From IMG/VR virus record IMGVR_UViG_3300033977_000108, positions 140,634-204,633 of that record: a DNA stretch of 64,000 bases. One strand, given 5' to 3'. A model generated the notes under the pieces. The model made no database searches and had not been told where the DNA came from. It saw only the letters and a program-made list of their open reading frames with translations. The position numbers were made by a program, and so were the translations under genes. Positions 2,077 to 59,274 of the stretch are shown in pieces. Positions within the stretch are counted from its first letter, which is position 1, and every line of letters begins with the position of its first letter.

Positions 2077-3124
2077 TGGCTGCTTCCTCAAGCGCAGGCT
2101 CAGTGCCATCCACCGCCTGCTTTATCTCATTGAATAGCTTGGGGTCATCTTTCATTTTACGATAGAAATTATAGTCCCCTTGTGCTTTCACATCGCCGTA
2201 TTGAAGCCAGGCGCCGCTCTTGGTAATGACTTTGGCGGCTTTGGCGGCGTCAAAATAGTCATAGATGGAGCTGAAGCCCTCATCAAAGATGTAGGTAAGA
2301 TTAGTAGCTAACCACTGCCGGCTTAGATTGTTCTTGGCCGTGAAGGCTTTGATTTTGAAGCCGTAGCACCTATCGTTGGCGTCCTTCAGCTTCTCAATGA
2401 TAGATAATTCCAGGCGGATAGAACCGAAGAAAGGCAACGCTCGGCCGCCCATAGTAACAAACTTCTGCTGGCCGGTTGGATTGTAGCCGATGTAAGACCG
2501 GGTCTGATTTATCCAAACGACGCAGGCGCGCTTCTTTACATTCTTCCTGAGGAAGCTGGACATCAAGCCAGCGATACCACACATCTTGTTTGCCTCATCG
2601 GCACTCTTCTCCAAGTTCGTCTTCAGGTCCAAGGCCGCCAAAGAATCAAGTACAACTAAATCAAAGACTTTGGCTGCTGATTTCACCAAATCGAGAACCT
2701 CTTCAGCGGACAGCACTTCCTCCGGGCGGATAATTCTGACCGCCGGTGTCGTCTGGTCCTGCTCTGGGTCGGTGATAATACCAATCCTGTGGAGATAATC
2801 GAGCGTCATAGTGCGCTCGGTGTCGATTATAACCGTCCGTAGCTTCTGCTTCTGGAACGCTGCCACAAAATGTAGCCCCAGACTTGTCTTTCCTACTTCA
2901 GTTTCCTTGCTGTAAATCTCAACATCTCTGCCAAGCGGAAGGCCTTTCAATGCCTGGTGTAAAATCACATCCAGTTGTGGAAAACCGGTGGATACACAGG
3001 CAACGCTCATATCCGGGGCATTTTCCGCCAATTCCACAAGCCCACTCAAGCCAGCTTTTGCCAAATCTTCTTCTAACTCCTTCTCAACATTGATGTTATC
3101 CTGTTCTGTTTTCTTCTTGGACAT
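2060..3124 (-). CDS. recA: RecA/UvsX-like recombinase
   Basis: VSTG...EIYSKETEVGKT (Walker A), IIDTE, VVLDSLAAL (Walker B), WINQTR, GGRALPFFGSIRL, KNN, SGAW. Confidence 0.93.
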   Translation of the reverse strand: MSKKKTEQDNINVEKELEEDLAKAGLSGLVELAENAPDMSVACVSTGFPQLDVILHQALKGLPLGRDVEIYSKETEVGKTSLGLHFVAAFQKQKLRTVIIDTERTMTLDYLHRIGIITDPEQDQTTPAVRIIRPEEVLSAEEVLDLVKSAAKVFDLVVLDSLAALDLKTNLEKSADEANKMCGIAGLMSSFLRKNVKKRACVVWINQTRSYIGYNPTGQQKFVTMGGRALPFFGSIRLELSIIEKLKDANDRCYGFKIKAFTAKNNLSRQWLATNLTYIFDEGFSSIYDYFDAAKAAKVITKSGAWLQYGDVKAQGDYNFYRKMKDDPKLFNEIKQAVDGTEPALEEAANESAA

Positions 3125-4583: not shown

Positions 4584-4598
4584 AGGTCTCAACCTCGG

Positions 4599-4671
4599 TA
4601 GTCGGGGCCGGATTCGAACCGCCAACGCCTGCCTTTTTAGGACAGTGCTCTATCATTGGAGCTACCCGTCT
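4599..4671 (-). tRNA. tRNA-like gene, anticodon AAA (Phe-like; possibly a pseudo-tRNA)
   Basis: Cloverleaf AGACGGG-TA-GCTC CAATGATA GAGC-A-CTGTC CTAAAAA GGCAG-GCGTT-GGCGG TTCGAAT CCGGC-CCCGACT-A; one mismatch each in the acceptor and T stems; ends ACCG rather than ACCA. Confidence 0.7.
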
Positions 4672-6392: not shown

Positions 6393-6662
6393 TCATATAT
6401 ACTTCGGAGTATCATAGCCCACATCGACAAGATATTTCTTGCCTGGTTTGTCTGGGTCGCCGTCCAATTCGTCCCAGACTTGGAATATCGAGGCAGTACT
6501 ATCAAGGTCTCTTATTATTTCCATCGCTTTTTGGGCGGCCTCAAGAGGGTCTTTGGCGTCTATGTCGATGTCCCATACAACATACCAGGACTTCAGCTTG
6601 CGCCTCTTACCAGATATAGCCTTCTTTGGTTGCCGTCTTTTGGTCTGACATGTAGACCTCAT
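6393..6662 (-). CDS. hypothetical protein
   Basis: YVVWDIDIDAKDPLEAA pattern typical of small phage proteins. Confidence 0.5.
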   Translation of the reverse strand: MRSTCQTKRRQPKKAISGKRRKLKSWYVVWDIDIDAKDPLEAAQKAMEIIRDLDSTASIFQVWDELDGDPDKPGKKYLVDVGYDTPKYI

Positions 6663-6803
6663 CTGGCGTCTCCTTCACGATTAACTGGCATCCATTGACA
6701 AGCTCCAGCTCTGTGTGGTCATTTACCCGGCAGGCAGTGACAATGTGTTCAAGAGCTATGTATACCGGCTTGCGGTCGATTAAGGTTAGTTGTTTGACAA
6801 TCA

Positions 6804-7247
6804 TTAGACATCCCTCCGGCTACGCTTGAAGCCCTCGGCCTCAGTGTAGAGGAATTTCTTACAGATATTCACCCTTTCATCTATGCAGTCAATAAGTCCT
6901 TCCAGGAGTTCTTTCCAGGCGACAAAACCTCCGCTGAGCTTTCTGCGGAAGGCGTCCCTGTCTAACTCTGTCATGTCCTTGCTCTTTGCCGGCAGGAAAG
7001 CAGAACTCTTGGAGCGTTCCACCAGGGCGGAAGCCAGCGATAACTGGGCTACCACCTTTACTCGCCAGCTATTTACTTCATCCATGTGTAGTTCAATGGA
7101 AGCTACATCCGATGACAGTACTTTTGTCTCCAGCAGGTCTTCCAGCGGAGCAAAACGGGATGACCATTCTGCATCCAAGGTGGAGCAAGCTGCGGTCAAG
7201 TCCTCGACTGACATAATAGCCAAAGCATCAGAGATTGTTGTTATCAT
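6804..7247 (-). CDS. helical protein, possibly a UvsY-like recombination mediator
   Basis: All-helical; K..TELDRDA...LEGLIDCIDER pattern reminiscent of UvsY; functional call is weak. Confidence 0.4.
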   Translation of the reverse strand: MITTISDALAIMSVEDLTAACSTLDAEWSSRFAPLEDLLETKVLSSDVASIELHMDEVNSWRVKVVAQLSLASALVERSKSSAFLPAKSKDMTELDRDAFRRKLSGGFVAWKELLEGLIDCIDERVNICKKFLYTEAEGFKRSRRDV

Positions 7248-7264
7248 AGCTCTCCTACAGTGAG

Positions 7265-7298
7265 GCGGAGTCGCCAGTTTATGAGTGGGCGACTCCGC
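7265..7298. terminator. GC-rich 11-bp hairpin (terminator-like or 3' end structure)
   Basis: GCGGAGTCGCC/GGCGACTCCGC perfect inverted repeat; followed by ATTTCTT on the + strand. Confidence 0.6.
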
Positions 7299-7306
7299 AT
7301 TTCTTA

Positions 7307-7536
7307 CCCCGGCATGAGCGAGGCACCGACAGCGTTAGCGGTCGAGCGGAAGCCGCGGCCACAATGAGGAATCCGACAAGGATTTCTGCCGTAACGGAGA
7401 GAATTTAGTGCTGGCACTAAATTCTCGTAGTGGAGGGCGGAAATCCGAGGGCGGATTCTGAATGTCTTGTGGATAAGCGGCTCCGCGAGAGTTGAAGGCA
7501 GCAGAGCTGCCTTCAGCTGCCCGCGTAGCGAAGGGG
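7307..7536. ncRNA. large structured non-coding element (~230 nt)
   Basis: Nested stems across the whole interval, including a perfect 13-bp inverted repeat at 7399-7426 and a 12-bp hairpin at 7491-7517; only a doubtful ORF overlaps it. Confidence 0.6.
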
Positions 7537-7551
7537 CCGAGCGGAACATTA

Positions 7552-7815
7552 CTAACAGTTCAACCTTTGGCATAGATCATCTATTTCTTCCGGGCTGAGC
7601 GGGGTGATTTTCTTTGTGAAGTGCGCCGGAAAGATAAGTATAGGTTCCCTGTTTTCCAATTCAGCTTCTCTTAATTCCTGTTCGAGATTGTTTTGCCAGT
7701 AGCGCAAGGCAGCCAGCACAGTAGCCACTTGCCTATCGGTCAAGAAGCGTCTGTGTAATCTACCCGTTGTCTTCGTCTTTAGTCTCTTCAGATTGTGCAT
7801 TGCTGGACCCATCAT
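7552..7815 (-). CDS. hypothetical protein
   Basis: ATVLAALRYWQ...PLSPEEIDDLCQRLN pattern seen in mobile-element proteins. Confidence 0.55.
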   Translation of the reverse strand: MMGPAMHNLKRLKTKTTGRLHRRFLTDRQVATVLAALRYWQNNLEQELREAELENREPILIFPAHFTKKITPLSPEEIDDLCQRLNC

Positions 7816-8356: not shown

Positions 8357-9538
8357 CTATTCATCCTCCTCGGGGATGGTATTCAGCATCAAATACCTTA
8401 ACTCTGGGTATTCCATTGCTACGCATGGGGCCTTATAACGACAATAGCGACATTGCCATGCCCCAATTATCTTATGCTTGGCTTCCCATTCTTTGTACTT
8501 TTTGTCGGTGATTAGCCCTTTGCCCTTCAGGTCTTCCACCTTCTCGGCCGTGTATTTGTATTGATATTCAGCCGGAGGCATGTAGCCAGCAGGCAGTTCA
8601 GCTATTTCGAGCCGGACCGCTTCCCAGAAATCAGCACCGGCTTTCTTTGACGCCTCGTCTAAATTGCCTTCATTGTCGGCAACTAATAGTGGGGGCTGTA
8701 CGCCCCTGAGCATCAGCCGTCTCTCAGCCTCATCTATGGCTCTTTGCCAGGCATCCTGTAAAGTCTTGTATCGTTGGTAGATATTCTCAATGGTAAATAC
8801 TTTCCAAGGTATGCCATCTACAGATGGGTAATGTAAACCGTCGGTATCCATGTAAATACCGATGTCAAACTCTCTTCTATTGCGGCCGGTCCGGTCTACA
8901 TAGAGGAGCTTGCCACCTAACTCACCATTGCCCATCAGGTCAAGTTGCGGCTGATACACTTGGATGCGATTCCTATGGCGCGCGGCGGCTTCAGGATTGT
9001 CGCGGGCCTCTTTGGCGCAAATCTCAATCGCGTCTTTCATACGCGCGCCTGTCCGCAGCTCATTCAAATAGACTACGAGTTGCAGCATGTGCTCAAGCTT
9101 TGGTTTGCCCTCTTTCACGATGCGCTTACTGGCAAAATACCCATCAAAGCTTTTGATTTCAGCAATCAATCCTTGCTGTGTATCTTTGTCCAGGAGCACA
9201 CCATCAAGCTCAAATGCCAGCTTTACGTCCTCAACCCAAACTTTTACGCCGGAAGCTACGCAGATGTTGGCGGCTATTGCTTGCTCGAAGACATCCTTTT
9301 CTACCGCCTTGCCTAAACGGACAATTTGACAGCCCGTGGCGTCCATTGGATTGGTGATAGGCTGCCCTGTCATTCTGAGATAACTGGCTCTATGGCACCC
9401 GCCCACAATGTCTGATTCGGTCTGGTCTAATAGGCAAGCGGAAGCTTCTGACGGCCAGACGGCGGGGAGCTGAGAGATACGGGGCTCCCAGTTCTCCATG
9501 GAAAGTAATATTTTGTCTAATTCCTCAAATACGCGCAT
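8357..9538 (-). CDS. Cas4/RecB-like PD-(D/E)XK exonuclease with 4-Cys Fe-S motif
   Basis: GGCHR (Cys1), ELDG, AEIKS, QLVVY (QxxxY), CRYCRYKAPC (3 Cys); extended-10 promoter upstream. Confidence 0.75.
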   Translation of the reverse strand: MRVFEELDKILLSMENWEPRISQLPAVWPSEASACLLDQTESDIVGGCHRASYLRMTGQPITNPMDATGCQIVRLGKAVEKDVFEQAIAANICVASGVKVWVEDVKLAFELDGVLLDKDTQQGLIAEIKSFDGYFASKRIVKEGKPKLEHMLQLVVYLNELRTGARMKDAIEICAKEARDNPEAAARHRNRIQVYQPQLDLMGNGELGGKLLYVDRTGRNRREFDIGIYMDTDGLHYPSVDGIPWKVFTIENIYQRYKTLQDAWQRAIDEAERRLMLRGVQPPLLVADNEGNLDEASKKAGADFWEAVRLEIAELPAGYMPPAEYQYKYTAEKVEDLKGKGLITDKKYKEWEAKHKIIGAWQCRYCRYKAPCVAMEYPELRYLMLNTIPEEDE

Positions 9539-10402: not shown

Positions 10403-10801
10403 CTAAATCTCCCTACCAATATCCTCACCGGCCTCAACTGCCTTGCCGGAATTTGTAGCCGTAAGGCCAGTAGATTGAAATGTATCCAGGACTTTCTCAG
10501 ACAATAGACATCTCAATGGTAAAACTTGTACTCGTTGTGTGCTGAAATAGGCGCGCTCTGGGGTACCGAGCATGTCCCTGCCCATGCCCACTGGCGTTTC
10601 TTTGCCAAACAAGCTTGTCGTTATAATGAGCAAGGCAGGATATTCCTCATCCACTGAGAGGGGAACGTTGGTATTGAACGGTGTCTTATAACCCCGGAGT
10701 ACGAAAGTAGTCTCGGATTCTGCTGCTACGGCCTGCCTTATTTCTTTGGTCTGTTCCGCATTCTTTGCTACTCTAACACTGACATAAACATCAAGGAGCA
10801 T
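10403..10801 (-). CDS. hypothetical protein
   Basis: 132-aa ORF translationally coupled to the AAA ATPase. Confidence 0.6.
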   Translation of the reverse strand: MLLDVYVSVRVAKNAEQTKEIRQAVAAESETTFVLRGYKTPFNTNVPLSVDEEYPALLIITTSLFGKETPVGMGRDMLGTPERAYFSTQRVQVLPLRCLLSEKVLDTFQSTGLTATNSGKAVEAGEDIGREI

Positions 10802-12882
10802 TAGACCTCCCTATCTGTTTCCAAGATGCCCTGGCTATACATCTCTTGCCGGTGTTTCCGCAGCCCGTTCCTATCTCTACCGCGCTCACGCCACTCCTTT
10901 GGACAATACCCGAAGTGCGTGACATATTCCAGTGCCAGGTCTATCAGAGCTTCTATCAGCTGCGTATTCGGCAGGATATTATCCATTGATAGTTCCCAAT
11001 CAGCGCGTGTGATTTCTGCCGAATCGGCTGCCTTTCTTTGCTCTGTCTTGGATAACTTCTTTATCTCCGGGTCTTCCAAGATGCGAAAGATAGCGTTGTT
11101 TAGGGCGTCTTTTGCTACTACTTCTATGTCGGCGCCGGTCCAAACATGGTCGGCCCAGATTAGGCGGCCTAAACCATGCTCTTTATTCTCCAACTTTGCC
11201 GTCTCTTTCAGATCCTTCGCCCAACGGAGATGATGCTTCTTGGCGATAGCTTGAAGCAGTTCGGCTCTGCCTTCACTATTTACCTCGGAAGGGGGCAGAG
11301 CTGGCAAAACAGCATCGAAGCGACCAGACCGGATTAGAGCGGTGTCCAATACATCTGGTCTGTTTGTGGCACCGATAATCACAATCTTACCTGCCCGGCT
11401 GTCATCGGACAAAAAGGTCATTAGTGAGTTGAATACCCGGGAAGAAGTCCCAGAGTCTCCTATTGAGGTTCGTCCGGCGGAGAGAACAGAATCTAATTCA
11501 TCAAGGAACAGAATGACAGGAGCGGCAGATTCCACAGCCTCCAAGAACTTGCGCGTCTTTGTCTCCGTTTCTCCCACAATGCCGCCGAAGAGCCTGTCAA
11601 GGTGGCCTATCATGAAATTCATTCTGGCTTCTTTGGCTAAGGCATTTGCTAAGAAGGTCTTACCGGTTCCTGGCGGACCGGTCAGGAGCACACCTTTGCT
11701 GCATGACCGCTTGTCGCCCACCATCAAGGGACGGATAATCATCCGCCTGAAGTATAACTTCAACTCTTCGTGGCCGCCTACCAGGTCGAAGCCATGCTCC
11801 GGTTCATAAAACTCAACCAGACCTTGATATTCCTCTTCAATAGCCCGCTGCTTTCGGGCGCGGATGGCCGTGAAATCGACGGGCACATTATCCAGCCAGG
11901 ACTGCATCAGAACATCCTCTAAATGGCATCTTGACATGCCTGCGGATTGGACGGCGAACAGATGCTCATCTACGCCTTCGGCATAGGCCACATCATGGAC
12001 GTTCCTGCTGGCTATTCTTACAGGATGGCCTTCTTTAGAGTATCTTCGGACCATCTCGGTGAAGTTGTGCAGCCATTCTTCACGCTCCTCCAGCTTTGGG
12101 TGCTTCACAAGGATGCTGCTTACTCTTGAAGAGCCTCCACTGATGCTGTCATGAATATCCGTGGAGTGGCGGCTGAGAATGATTATCATGTTCTTATTGC
12201 CAATGGCTTCATCTGCCGCCCAGTTGCGCAGGTGTACTATAGGCAGCCTATCGGTTAGGTTCAGTTGGGACATCTGCCCGTTAGGGAAGATGGCATCCCC
12301 ATCTTTGAATATAATCCTAAAGCATGTCTCAGGTTTCCCGACTTCCCCCTTCTTCCTTGCGGCCTGGTTCTTCTCGTATAGAGCTTTAGACGCGGCGAAC
12401 CACATACTCAGCGTCTTCAAACAAGCCATCAAATCGGGCGGGTGGATAATCAGATTCCACGGTACCATGCTGTCGTCGCTATCCTTTGCCTCATCGGGAT
12501 AGCAGGCAGCCATGATAGTCTCCCAGTCTTTACGGGATTTCTCATGGACAAAAGTCAGCCCCTCATTCAGGCTATAGCAGGCCATTACACGATTGTCGGC
12601 TTGCAGGATTTCTTTCTTTTGAGCGGCTGTAGTGGCTTTCATTAGTCTATAATTTACATCCAGTTTGGTAGCGAGAAGGTCTATAATATGAGATCTACAG
12701 CCGCTATTGTCCTGGTAGTCGTTGATGTTCCCGTGGAGAATAAAGGTATGGGCTATCTTCGCTTTATAGTCGCGGGCTAATTTACGGATGGCTTCCGGCT
12801 CAGGAAACTCATAAGCCTTTGTCTCTTCCACCGCGTCCTCTGATTCGGGCTTTTTGGTCTTATTTTCTTCGTCCGGCATCAT
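10801..12882 (-). CDS. classical-clade AAA+ ATPase (Ycf46/Cdc48-like; degenerate N-terminal domain plus one active AAA domain)
   Basis: GPPGTGKT, LFLDELD, GATNRPDVLDTALIRSGRFD (second region of homology), WTGADIE. Confidence 0.9.
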   Translation of the reverse strand: MMPDEENKTKKPESEDAVEETKAYEFPEPEAIRKLARDYKAKIAHTFILHGNINDYQDNSGCRSHIIDLLATKLDVNYRLMKATTAAQKKEILQADNRVMACYSLNEGLTFVHEKSRKDWETIMAACYPDEAKDSDDSMVPWNLIIHPPDLMACLKTLSMWFAASKALYEKNQAARKKGEVGKPETCFRIIFKDGDAIFPNGQMSQLNLTDRLPIVHLRNWAADEAIGNKNMIIILSRHSTDIHDSISGGSSRVSSILVKHPKLEEREEWLHNFTEMVRRYSKEGHPVRIASRNVHDVAYAEGVDEHLFAVQSAGMSRCHLEDVLMQSWLDNVPVDFTAIRARKQRAIEEEYQGLVEFYEPEHGFDLVGGHEELKLYFRRMIIRPLMVGDKRSCSKGVLLTGPPGTGKTFLANALAKEARMNFMIGHLDRLFGGIVGETETKTRKFLEAVESAAPVILFLDELDSVLSAGRTSIGDSGTSSRVFNSLMTFLSDDSRAGKIVIIGATNRPDVLDTALIRSGRFDAVLPALPPSEVNSEGRAELLQAIAKKHHLRWAKDLKETAKLENKEHGLGRLIWADHVWTGADIEVVAKDALNNAIFRILEDPEIKKLSKTEQRKAADSAEITRADWELSMDNILPNTQLIEALIDLALEYVTHFGYCPKEWRERGRDRNGLRKHRQEMYSQGILETDREV

Positions 12883-59197: not shown

Positions 59198-59274
59198 TGG
59201 TCGGGGCGCCCAGACTTGAACCGGGGACCTCTTGCGCCCAAGGCAAGCGCGCTACCAGGCTGCGCCACGCCCCG
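59198..59274 (-). tRNA. tRNA-Pro(TGG)
   Basis: CGGGGCG..GCGCAGCCTGGTAGCGC..CTTGC CTTGGGC GCAAG..CCCGG TTCAAGT CTGGG CGCCCCG ACCA; canonical with encoded CCA. Confidence 0.97.

What the first reader, a model, noticed from the sequence alone, without database searches (positions are those of the whole stretch)
7265..7545. ~230-nt multi-stem non-coding RNA (or ssDNA structure) matching no family I recognise
An outer stem (CCCC..GCG-A-GGCA / TGCC-CGC..GGGG, 7307-7325/7518-7536) closes a junction. The junction holds a small hairpin (7327-7344), a 12-bp hairpin (7491-7517) and a ~140-nt rod. The rod comprises GCGGAAGCCGC/GCGGCTCCGC, ATCCGACAAG/CTTGTGGAT and GATTTCTGCC/GGCGGAAATC, a bubble, and a perfect 13-bp terminal repeat GAGAATTTAGTGC/GCACTAAATTCTC. 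A separate 11-bp hairpin follows at 7265-7298. Two stems form G.U pairs only on the + strand, hinting at an antisense-oriented RNA in an otherwise all-minus region. The rod-with-bubble shape recalls 6S RNA (RNA polymerase decoy); a protein or defence-sensor decoy or an origin/cruciform are alternatives. I saw no SRP, tmRNA or RNase P signatures.
Basis: partly seen in the sequence, partly recalled or inferred. Interest (0 to 1): 0.75.

Follow-up and report, generated by a model that had tools for sequence, protein, structure and literature searches.

The report
Orphan structured RNA-like element in phage
A 304-base gap between two genes of a 205-kb peat phage folds into an unusually stable multi-stem structure that one related phage keeps through compensating base changes, so it is most likely a new structured non-coding RNA of unknown function, not a gene, a repeat or a known RNA family.

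Summary
Window 7248-7551 is non-coding. It folds into hairpin H1, then an outer stem closing a junction with a small hairpin, a 141-nt rod and a 13-bp hairpin. Fold z is -8.75, and it is the most structured 300-nt stretch of the 204,633-bp phage genome. No Rfam family matches. The 89-aa ORF is not conserved. The only close relative (L004/L005; neighbouring protein 65% identical) has the element in the same place. blastn cannot align the two, yet 35 aligned pairs show 14 double compensatory changes and none broken. A model built from the window rod alone ranks L004 first. More distant relatives carry other structured non-coding elements of 347-613 nt in the same slot (nuclease ... 147-aa gene ... 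RecA). Those show strong covariation but no model-level homology to the window element; some relatives have none. GC is 5-9 points above the flanks, purine skew is reversed, and loops are A/G-rich with GNA/GNA internal loops. Wobble pairs in the window type fit only the + strand. All this favours an RNA read antisense to the neighbouring genes. The 6S, retron, MITE and origin readings fail tests. No RNA-seq run was listed, so strand, ends and function are inferred. My best guess is an accessory protein-binding scaffold or decoy RNA.

The parts
7248..7551 (+). Whole non-coding element. It fills the gap between the stop of the upstream small gene (7552) and the start codon of the 147-aa gene (7247). 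GC is 0.58 against 0.48 in the flanks.
7265..7298 (+). Hairpin H1: 11-bp stem, 12-nt loop. On the gene strand it ends 8 nt upstream of the GGAGAG ribosome-binding site of the 147-aa gene. On + it is followed by AUUUCUUA.
   Evidence: An equivalent hairpin precedes the next gene's RBS in most related elements (weak or absent in L085).
7307..7324 (+). 5' strand of outer stem P1. It contains the block AUGAGCG, which is conserved in L004.
7519..7536 (+). 3' strand of outer stem P1. It contains GUAGCGAAG; the GCGAAG word is shared by 6 of 7 lineages.
7327..7344 (+). Small hairpin P2 (loop GUUA). Its sequence block GCGKUUAKGCGGYCGAGC is conserved in L004.
7346..7486 (+). 141-nt rod P3:
- helix P3a: 7346-56/7477-86
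- helix P3b: 7359-64/7467-72
- helix P3c: 7366-75/7452-66
- internal loop ACAA/GAGGG
- helix P3d: 7380-90/7436-46
- a 3x3 GGA/GUA loop: 7396-98/7427-29
   Evidence: Window versus L004: 24 aligned pairs, 10 changed on both sides, 0 broken. The rod model R2 finds L004 as its top hit.
7399..7426 (+). Perfect AT-rich terminal hairpin of the rod: 12-13 bp, loop (C)UGG.
   Evidence: Every related element has a perfect 10-16-bp tip of different sequence.
7490..7518 (+). Hairpin P4: 13 bp, loop AGA. The tip GGCAGC-RGA-GCUG is conserved in L004.
7376..7393 (+). The longest sequence block shared with L004 (ACAAGGAWWWNUGCCGUA). CAAGGA occurs in most related elements.
7264..7545 (+). Five copies of RGCGGA, all on +, starting at 7264, 7345, 7436, 7450 and 7540. 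About 0.17 are expected per 300 nt, and this is the highest density in the genome. L004 has seven GCGGA.
6804..7247 (-). Downstream neighbour: a conserved 147-aa all-helical protein. It anchors the synteny and is not shown to be functionally linked to the element.
7552..7815 (-). Upstream neighbour: a small protein (public calls give 58 aa). It has a sub-threshold PriCT_1 hit.
7304..7573 (-). 89-aa ORF overlapping the element, judged spurious.
   Evidence: No family hit; not conserved in L004.

Best explanation
The gap holds a gene for a structured non-coding RNA of about 230-290 nt. It is most likely read from the + strand, antisense to the surrounding minus-strand genes.

The RNA folds into an outer stem closing a three-branch junction (small hairpin, long rod, 13-bp hairpin), preceded by hairpin H1. 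The rod is a chain of short G-C-rich helices separated by purine-rich internal loops (GGA/GUA, ACAA/GAGGG) and capped by a perfect AT-rich hairpin.

Shown: the region is non-coding; its structure is extreme for this genome; and the structure is preserved by compensatory change in a relative.

Inferred: the element is an accessory, dispensable RNA. It sits in a hypervariable slot between the recombination-nuclease gene and the RecA-like gene, and relatives carry other structured elements there or none. I infer that it acts in trans as a scaffold or decoy that binds a protein through its repeated GNA/GNA (loop-E-like) modules and conserved single-stranded blocks. The partner and the benefit to the phage (host takeover or counter-defence) are unknown.
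For: - Non-coding: the ORF is not conserved and has no Pfam or PHROG hit.
- Structure: z -8.75, and the top window of the genome.
- Conservation without sequence similarity: blastn finds no alignment between the window and L004 elements, yet the window-only rod model ranks L004:61-212(-) first at 16.8 bits, E about 0.06-0.1, on the correct strand and at the correct place.
- Forcing L004 into the window topology costs only 3 kcal/mol and reproduces the outer stem, rod and P4.
- Rod pairs: 13 same, 1 one-sided change, 10 double changes, 0 broken. P4 adds 4 more double changes (read).
- Strand: GC is 5-9 points above the flanks, and the purine skew is reversed in all lineages (0.40-0.44 against 0.54-0.57 on the gene strand).
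- Unpaired bases on the antisense strand are A 42, G 27, U 17, C 15 %, the usual make-up of structured RNAs (established knowledge).
- Four G.U pairs in core helices and no 1x1 A.C mismatch on +. L004 has 14 G.U on the antisense strand against 3 on the gene strand.
- The syntenic slot holds other structured elements with strong covariation: 92.5% of cells paired, 20 pairs with double changes against 8 in shuffles, 0 of 500 shuffles as high.
- Single copy in the genome.
- Absent from relatives L082, L093 and L006/7, so it is dispensable.
Against: - No transcript data: no RNA run was listed.
- No sigma-70-like promoter on either strand, and no convincing terminator at the putative 3' end.
- With composition controlled, fold z-scores are almost equal on the two strands.
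- In the neighbouring element class, wobble counts do not pick a strand (10 G.U against 7 A.C).
- In several relatives H1 is a canonical terminator on the gene strand.
- Only two lineages of the window type exist, so the covariation rests on a structure-guided pairwise alignment.
- The tip hairpins are perfect Watson-Crick in every lineage, which also fits selection at the DNA level or on both strands.
- The decoy or scaffold function is pure inference.
Confidence: 0.4

Rival explanations
1. A cis-acting element of the gene-strand (minus) polycistronic mRNA. It would be a long structured spacer that acts as an RNase III-type processing site, 3'-end stabiliser or insulator for the upstream unit. 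H1 would be the 5' hairpin or attenuator of the downstream gene's message.
For: - All flanking genes are on the minus strand, so read-through transcription of this strand is expected.
- H1 sits 8-12 nt upstream of the next gene's RBS in most lineages, and in L008, L083, L091 and L092 it is followed by a U-tract on the gene strand, as in an intrinsic terminator.
- An A/T-rich -10-like hexamer lies just upstream of H1 on the gene strand in each lineage (read).
- Fold z-scores are about as strong on this strand.
- Long near-perfect duplexes are natural RNase III substrates (established knowledge from T7 early mRNA processing).
Against: - On this strand the loops would be U/C-rich and the internal loops pyrimidine-pyrimidine.
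- P1 does not form, and the window architecture is 27.7 kcal/mol weaker.
- The four G.U pairs become A.C mismatches on this strand.
- At 300-600 nt with a conserved multi-branch architecture, the element is far more than known processing sites need.
- In the window, H1 has no U-tract on the gene strand.
Confidence: 0.25
2. A DNA-level element: a replication origin or single-strand initiation site whose hairpins form in unwound DNA, possibly primed by a purine-rich transcript. That would be analogous to ColE1 RNA II or to T4 ori(uvsY), which lies at the recombination-mediator gene.
For: - The element folds strongly with DNA parameters too (-82 kcal/mol, z -8.4 on +).
- The tip hairpins are perfect palindromes in every lineage, with no wobble.
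- RGCGGA words are repeated on one strand.
- The location is among recombination and replication genes (nuclease 8357-9538, RecA-like 2111-3124).
- The 147-aa neighbour has a weak, inconclusive resemblance to T4 UvsY.
- The upstream small protein has a sub-threshold primase-C-terminal hit.
Against: - The element is GC-rich, not AT-rich.
- It is absent from several relatives that keep the flanking genes, which is unexpected for an essential origin.
- The RGCGGA words are irregularly spaced, and they are explained as halves of GC-GGA/GUA-GC internal-loop modules.
- The strand-asymmetric A/G-rich loops are not predicted by a duplex origin.
- The UvsY resemblance is within the noise for helical bundles (Z about 9).
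Confidence: 0.15
3. A selfish or decaying palindromic insertion (MITE-like element or relic of a mobile cassette) with no function for the phage.
For: - Patchy presence among relatives, with different element types and positions within the same slot.
- Nested insertions into hairpin loops, one carrying a 54-aa ORF.
- Overall imperfect-palindrome shape.
Against: - Single copy in both complete genomes.
- No copy in viral, metagenome or bacterial genome collections by pattern plus model screening.
- Retained at the same site while the neighbouring protein diverged to 65% identity, with helices kept by about 14 double substitutions and none broken. That implies purifying selection on structure.
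Confidence: 0.1
4. A CsrA/RsmA-type sponge RNA that titrates a GGA-binding translational regulator of the host.
For: - The most conserved block between the two copies is ACAAGGA. It matches the core of the SELEX consensus RUACARGGAUGU (recalled knowledge, not tested here).
- CAAGGA recurs in most related elements.
- There are 10 GGA in 304 nt.
Against: - Most GGA lie in stems or 3x3 internal loops, not in hairpin loops.
- The hairpin loops are GUUA, CUGG and AGA.
- GGA density is not exceptional for the genome (other windows have 16).
- The architecture is a long rod, unlike the multi-hairpin Csr/Rsm RNAs.
- The host is unknown.
Confidence: 0.05

Closest known systems
6S RNA (RNA polymerase decoy)
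   Same: A non-coding, largely double-stranded rod of comparable length. A protein-decoy mode of action is conceivable.
   Different: There is no hit to the Rfam 6S models. There is no large central bubble; the largest internal loop is 4x5 nt. The rod is one branch of a multi-branch junction rather than the whole molecule.
Large orphan phage-associated RNAs (GOLLD, ROOL) and other GC-rich intergenic structured RNA candidates
   Same: Found in phage genomes. It forms a GC-rich island in an intergenic region, has an elaborate conserved secondary structure, and its function is unknown. It is the kind of region the GC-and-length intergenic screens pick up (PMC6429828, PMC8632094; 10.1101/2024.12.08.627333).
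   Different: Much smaller (about 0.3 kb against 0.6-0.8 kb). No sequence or structure match in Rfam. Known from only two lineages. No evidence of multimerisation.
Viral decoy RNAs such as adenovirus VA RNA, and the staphylococcal phage cabRNA sensed by CBASS
   Same: Structured viral transcripts whose shape, not coding content, engages a host protein (cabRNA: PMC10686824). All have a rod-plus-junction design.
   Different: No homology. cabRNA derives from terminase gene transcripts and triggers immunity rather than blocking it. No binding partner is known here.
Phage T7 RNase III processing hairpins
   Same: Intergenic, irregular hairpins with internal loops inside a same-strand gene block. 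A hairpin lies next to the following gene.
   Different: T7 sites are about 60 nt single hairpins on the mRNA strand. This element is 304 nt, multi-branched, and compositionally oriented to the opposite strand.
ColE1 RNA II and T4 ori(uvsY) (RNA-primed origins)
   Same: A structured or purine-rich transcript next to replication and recombination genes. In T4 the origin lies at the recombination-mediator gene.
   Different: No AT-rich unwinding element. The element is dispensable in relatives. The UvsY identity of the neighbour is unproven.
Structured elements in the same slot of related phages (L008, L010, L080, L083, L085, L091, L092)
   Same: Same slot between the ~400-aa nuclease and the 147-aa gene. 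Shared features: reversed purine skew, raised GC, an H1-like hairpin before the next RBS in most, a rod tipped by a perfect AT-rich hairpin, GNA/GNA loops, and the shared words GCGAAG, CAAGGA and AGCCG.
   Different: A covariance model of that class does not detect the window or L004 element, and the window rod model does not detect them. The order of the domains differs. Homology is therefore not established.

Membership tests
6S RNA | Match to the curated 6S covariance models | tested here: not met
   No 6S hit at gathering score, or at E up to 10 on 7100-7700.
6S RNA | A single rod with a large central bubble that mimics an open promoter | tested here: not met
   The largest internal loop is ACAA/GAGGG (4x5). 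The rod is only one branch of a junction.
6S RNA | Binds RNA polymerase holoenzyme and templates pRNA | not testable with these tools
   Needs biochemistry.
Any Rfam 15 family | Covariance-model match | tested here: not met
   Only two tRNAs in the window. Only trivial hairpin matches near the element. Nothing in the related loci except one tRNA.
Retron or other reverse-transcriptase-associated ncRNA | An adjacent or genome-encoded reverse transcriptase | tested here: not met
   No RVT_1 match in the complete 204,633-bp genome.
MITE or dispersed repeat | Multiple copies in the genome or elsewhere | tested here: not met
   Only the self match. Pattern hits in the viral, metagenome and genome collections were chance.
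Protein-coding gene (89-aa ORF 7304-7573) | Reading frame and protein conserved in relatives | tested here: not met
   L004 has stops in all six frames and no similar peptide. No Pfam or PHROG hit.
Replication origin (iteron / AT-rich unwinding type) | AT-rich unwinding region and regularly spaced iterons | tested here: not met
   GC is 0.58 against 0.48 in the flanks. RGCGGA spacing is 81, 91, 14 and 90 nt (starts 7264, 7345, 7436, 7450, 7540).
Replication origin (iteron / AT-rich unwinding type) | Conserved in related genomes | tested here: not met
   L082, L093 and L006/7 have no non-coding element in the slot. An origin elsewhere in those genomes cannot be excluded.
Csr/Rsm sponge RNA | Many GGA motifs presented in hairpin loops | tested here: not met
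   10 GGA, mostly in stems or internal loops. The hairpin loops are GUUA, CUGG and AGA.
K-turn / L7Ae-type RNP | A 3-nt bulge followed by tandem G.A pairs, and an L7Ae-family protein | tested here: not met
   The loops are symmetric 3x3 (GGA/GUA), not bulged. There is no L7Ae match in the genome.
Structured-element class of the related phages (model R1) | Match to the covariance model built from 8 relatives | tested here: not met
   No hit in the window or L004 at E up to 10. With filters off, only single hairpins matched.
Conserved structured RNA (generic criterion) | Helices maintained by compensatory substitutions in homologues | tested here: met
   Window against L004: 35 aligned pairs, of which 19 are unchanged, 2 changed on one side, 14 changed on both sides and 0 broken. 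The alignment is structure-guided and rests on two lineages only.
Conserved structured RNA (generic criterion) | A discrete transcript of the predicted strand | not testable with these tools
   No RNA run was listed for this sequence.

The most novel reading that the evidence does not exclude
A hypervariable slot next to the recombination genes of a family of peat and soil jumbo phages hosts fast-evolving scaffold RNAs. They are read antisense to the surrounding operon and are built from stacked GNA/GNA (loop-E-like) modules on long rods. They would sequester a host protein such as a defence sensor or an RNA-binding regulator, making them a bacterial-virus counterpart of the VA/EBER-type decoy RNAs of animal viruses. 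The window element and the differently built elements of the relatives would be alternative solutions to the same task.
Probability: 0.2. Interest if true: 0.85.

Novelty: new variant of a known kind. Interest (0 to 1): 0.55.

Why it matters
Few structured non-coding RNAs of large phages have a known role, and RNA-based manipulation of hosts by phages is only starting to be described.

This locus offers a compact candidate of about 290 nt with a clear secondary structure. It also offers a natural comparison set: relatives that carry a different structured element in the same slot, and relatives that carry none. If the + strand transcript exists, the repeated purine-loop modules and the few conserved single-stranded blocks are ready-made targets for pull-downs and mutagenesis.

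If it turns out instead to be an mRNA processing site or an origin, it would still mark a regulatory landmark in an uncultured jumbo-phage lineage.

Tried and rejected
- Rfam at gathering and at permissive thresholds, on the window and on nine related loci: nothing.
- The phage GenBank collection by blastn: no match.
- Relatives via the flanking proteins in IMG/VR: none close. L003 is distant and has no element.
- DNA patterns taken from the blocks shared with L004 were scanned in IMG/VR, JGI metagenomes and GTDB genomes. All 36 + 29 + 1 + 7 hits were chance by blastn, fold inspection or model screening.
- The 138-aa upstream protein family is large, but no member exceeds 50% identity, so it gave no further carrier of the window type.
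- RNA-seq: no RNA run was listed.
- Promoter motifs: a CTATACTAACCAGG motif recurs upstream of structural genes. The TACTAAC at 7551-7557 is only the end of the upstream gene plus its stop codon, not a copy of that motif.
- The CTATRGACTAAGG word of the relatives' elements is unique in its genome, so it is not a general promoter.
- Genome searches found no reverse transcriptase, T7-type RNA polymerase, RtcB or L7Ae.
- Energy asymmetry between the strands is mostly compositional.
- The wobble tally in the relatives' alignment does not pick a strand.
- The UvsY identity of the 147-aa neighbour was tested by Pfam, PDB profile search, AlphaFold model and fold search. The result is inconclusive: a generic helical bundle, with Z about 9 to UvsY against up to 10.8 for unrelated bundles.
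- No H1-like hairpin is a general feature of other gaps in this genome.
- No terminator is conserved beyond the 3' end on the antisense strand.

Full report
**Setting.** The window is the last 64 kb of a complete 204,633-bp phage record with direct terminal repeats. It was assembled from a peat metagenome. Around the finding all genes lie on the minus strand. The finding fills the 304-nt gap 7248-7551. On one side is a small gene ending at 7552 (maximal ORF 87 aa; public gene calls give 58 aa). On the other is a 147-aa gene starting at 7247.

- RNAfold gives -155.6 kcal/mol for the + strand (z -8.75; none of 100 dinucleotide shuffles as good) and -137.5 for the minus strand (z -7.57).
- The helices are H1 7265-75/7288-98, outer stem P1 7307-24/7519-36, P2 7327-44, the rod P3 7346-7486 with its perfect 12-13-bp tip at 7399-7426, and P4 7490-7518.
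The relative supports the former.
- In a scan of the whole genome with 300-nt windows, corrected for GC, this is the strongest outlier on the + strand.
- The element has GC 0.58 against 0.48 in the flanks.

**Is it coding or a known RNA?** Neither.
- The 89-aa ORF on the minus strand has no Pfam or PHROG hit.
- The homologous region of the relative L004 has stops in all six frames and no similar peptide.
- Rfam 15 gives nothing but two tRNAs in the window and only trivial hairpin matches at E up to 10 around the element.

**Relatives of the window element.** The flanking 147-aa protein has 11 relatives among 5.8 billion proteins.
- Only the closest one (65% identity; contigs L004 and L005 from one sample) has a non-coding stretch upstream of the gene. 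That stretch is cut by the contig end.
- blastn cannot align it to the window element. MAFFT shows islands of identity: AUGAGCG, GCGKUUAKGCGGYCGAGC and ACAAGGAWWWNUGCCGUA.
- It folds well (-143.8 kcal/mol, z about -5).
- A covariance model built from the window rod alone (R2) ranks L004:61-212 on the antisense strand as its top hit, at 16.8 bits and E about 0.06-0.1. No other locus scores comparably.
- Forcing the window-like base of the rod in L004 costs only 3 kcal/mol. It yields the same topology: an outer stem, the rod and a P4-like hairpin whose tip GGCAGC-RGA-GCUG is conserved.
- In the structure-guided alignment of the rod, 24 pairs are 13 unchanged, 1 changed on one side, 10 changed on both sides and 0 broken. 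P4 adds 11 pairs with 4 double changes.
- The structure is therefore under selection while the sequence has drifted. The caveat is that there are only two lineages and the alignment is guided by the structure.

**The wider slot.** The more distant relatives lack an element directly upstream of the 147-aa gene. Many have a structured non-coding stretch of 347-613 nt one to five genes further upstream.
- All these loci share the order: a nuclease of about 400 aa (41-44% identical to window 8357-9538), then variable small genes, then the 147-aa gene, then a RecA-like gene (window 2111-3124).
- Eight of these elements align, and their consensus structure shows strong covariation. 92.5% of cells are paired. 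20 pairs have double changes against 8.0 in shuffles (0 of 500 as high). Slid controls give 26-43% paired.
- Their model (R1) does not detect the window or L004 element, and R2 does not detect them. I therefore do not claim homology between the two classes.
- The two classes do share a style: raised GC and reversed purine skew; an H1-like hairpin 8-12 nt before the next gene's RBS in most; a rod tipped by a perfect AT-rich 10-16-bp hairpin whose sequence differs in every lineage; purine-rich symmetric internal loops; and words such as GCGAAG (6 of 7 lineages against 1.1 expected), CAAGGA and AGCCG.
- L082, L093, L006/7 and L079 have no element in the slot.
- Each class is single-copy in its complete genome.

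**Which strand?** The evidence favours +, but moderately.
- *For + (antisense to the genes).* On the gene strand the elements have purine fraction 0.40-0.44 against 0.54-0.57 in the flanking genes, in every lineage. Unpaired bases on the antisense strand are A 42, G 27, U 17, C 15 %, the usual profile of structured RNAs. The internal loops are GGA/GUA, GA/GA or GAA/GGA, which are stable purine-purine motifs on this strand and pyrimidine mismatches on the other. In the window, four G.U pairs lie in core helices with no 1x1 A.C mismatch, and the mirrored structure on the minus strand is 27.7 kcal/mol weaker with P1 lost. L004 has 14 G.U on the antisense strand against 3 on the gene strand.
- *Against a firm call.* With composition controlled, z-scores are similar on both strands. 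The relatives' alignment has 10 G.U against 7 A.C. The tip hairpins never use wobble pairs. In several relatives H1 plus a U-tract is a canonical terminator on the gene strand. No promoter or terminator defines a + strand unit.
- No RNA sequencing run was listed for this sequence.

**The RGCGGA repeat.** Five copies lie on + in 304 nt against 0.17 expected, the densest in the genome. L004 has seven GCGGA. In both copies these words are mostly one half of a recurring module: a 2-bp G-C step followed by a 3x3 loop (GC-GGA opposite GUA-GC). L004 stacks four such modules in its rod, and the window has one next to the tip. The repeat is therefore better read as an RNA structural module than as DNA iterons. 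Its spacing is also irregular.

**Tests of named ideas.**
- 6S RNA: no model hit and no central bubble.
- Retron or other RT-linked RNA: no reverse transcriptase in the genome.
- K-turn RNP: the loops are symmetric, and no L7Ae is encoded.
- T7-type promoter: no such polymerase was detected, but the control genomes did not ring either, so this is weak evidence.
- MITE: single copy, and absent from all collections searched.
- Origin: the element is GC-rich and dispensable in relatives.
- Csr/Rsm sponge: the conserved ACAAGGA resembles the CsrA SELEX core (recalled knowledge), but the GGA motifs are not displayed in hairpin loops.
- UvsY link: the 147-aa neighbour is a three-helix bundle (pLDDT 81.5). 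T4 UvsY chains appear among its structural matches at Z 8.8-9.2, but unrelated bundles score up to 10.8. Sequence profiles find nothing. The analogy with T4 ori(uvsY) is only a lead.

**Most likely mechanism.** I commit to an accessory structured RNA read from the + strand that acts in trans as a protein-binding scaffold or decoy (confidence about 0.4).
- *Shown:* it is non-coding; its structure is extreme; the structure is conserved through compensation; it is a single copy; it sits in a variable, dispensable slot.
- *Inferred:* transcription, strand, ends, trans action and the protein partner.
- *Rivals:* a processing, stability or insulator element of the minus-strand mRNA (0.25); a DNA-level origin or priming site (0.15); a selfish relic (0.1); and a CsrA-type sponge, a specific form of the decoy idea (0.05).

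**Verdict.** This is a real and statistically extreme element. It is conserved in structure and matches no described family. It is a credible new phage ncRNA candidate whose function cannot be settled without expression data.

Noticed in passing
window 4597-4671 (-) and 59198-59274 (-): Two phage tRNA genes. ARAGORN calls the first tRNA-Phe with the unusual anticodon AAA (Rfam tRNA score 42.5 bits). The second is tRNA-Pro(UGG).
   Followed up: no
G000:C1 33644, 40282, 49459, 69575, 73029, 95752 (+); 127604, 127742 (-): outside the window: A motif CYATACTAACCAGG(AG) recurs immediately upstream of ribosome-binding sites, mostly of plus-strand genes (the block I take to be structural), so it is probably a late-type promoter. 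The 215-kb relative G001 has the variant CTATACTAATCAGG about ten times.
   Followed up: partly
G000:C1 17543-18107 (outside the window): A second long, strongly folding stretch in the same genome, where my crude gene call places only an 80-aa ORF that I suspect is spurious. It comprises a ~290-nt long-range rod plus a 206-nt gap of 64% GC with three strong hairpins. Neither RNA model detects it.
   Followed up: partly
L091:6542-7152 (= L095, L097) and L092:6539-7151: In these relatives the structured element is enlarged to about 610 nt by an insertion into a hairpin loop. A 54-aa ORF falls inside that insertion (my crude caller puts it on the gene strand in L092 and on the opposite strand in L091). 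L083 and L084 have a shorter insertion at the same point.
   Followed up: partly
window 6804-7247 (-) and 2111-3124 (-): The 147-aa neighbour is a conserved three-helix protein with a weak, inconclusive likeness to the T4 recombination mediator UvsY. A RecA/UvsX-like gene (55% identical to that of L008) lies 3.7 kb downstream.
   Followed up: partly
window 7552-7815 (-): The small upstream protein belongs to a family of about 60-aa proteins seen in many metagenomes. The family includes a Planctomycetes MAG and atlas clusters dominated by Planctomycetota, a faint hint about the host. It has a sub-threshold PriCT_1 hit.
   Followed up: partly
window 6607-6804 (-): A 65-aa ORF with a just-sub-threshold match to the flagellar protein family FlbD (23.9 bits against a 24.7 cut-off).
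   Followed up: no
window 8357-9538 (-) and 10801-12882 (-): A Cas4/RecB-like nuclease (PHROG 1706) conserved at 41-44% identity across the related phages, and a 693-aa AAA+ ATPase.
   Followed up: partly
L008:2159-2289 compared with L010, L083, L091, L092: In L008 the segments GUGAGC ... AACGAACG ... tip ... GCUCAC ... CGUUCGUU are ordered so that both pairings cannot nest. This is either a possible pseudoknot or two alternative folds. Only the second pairing covaries in the relatives.
   Followed up: no
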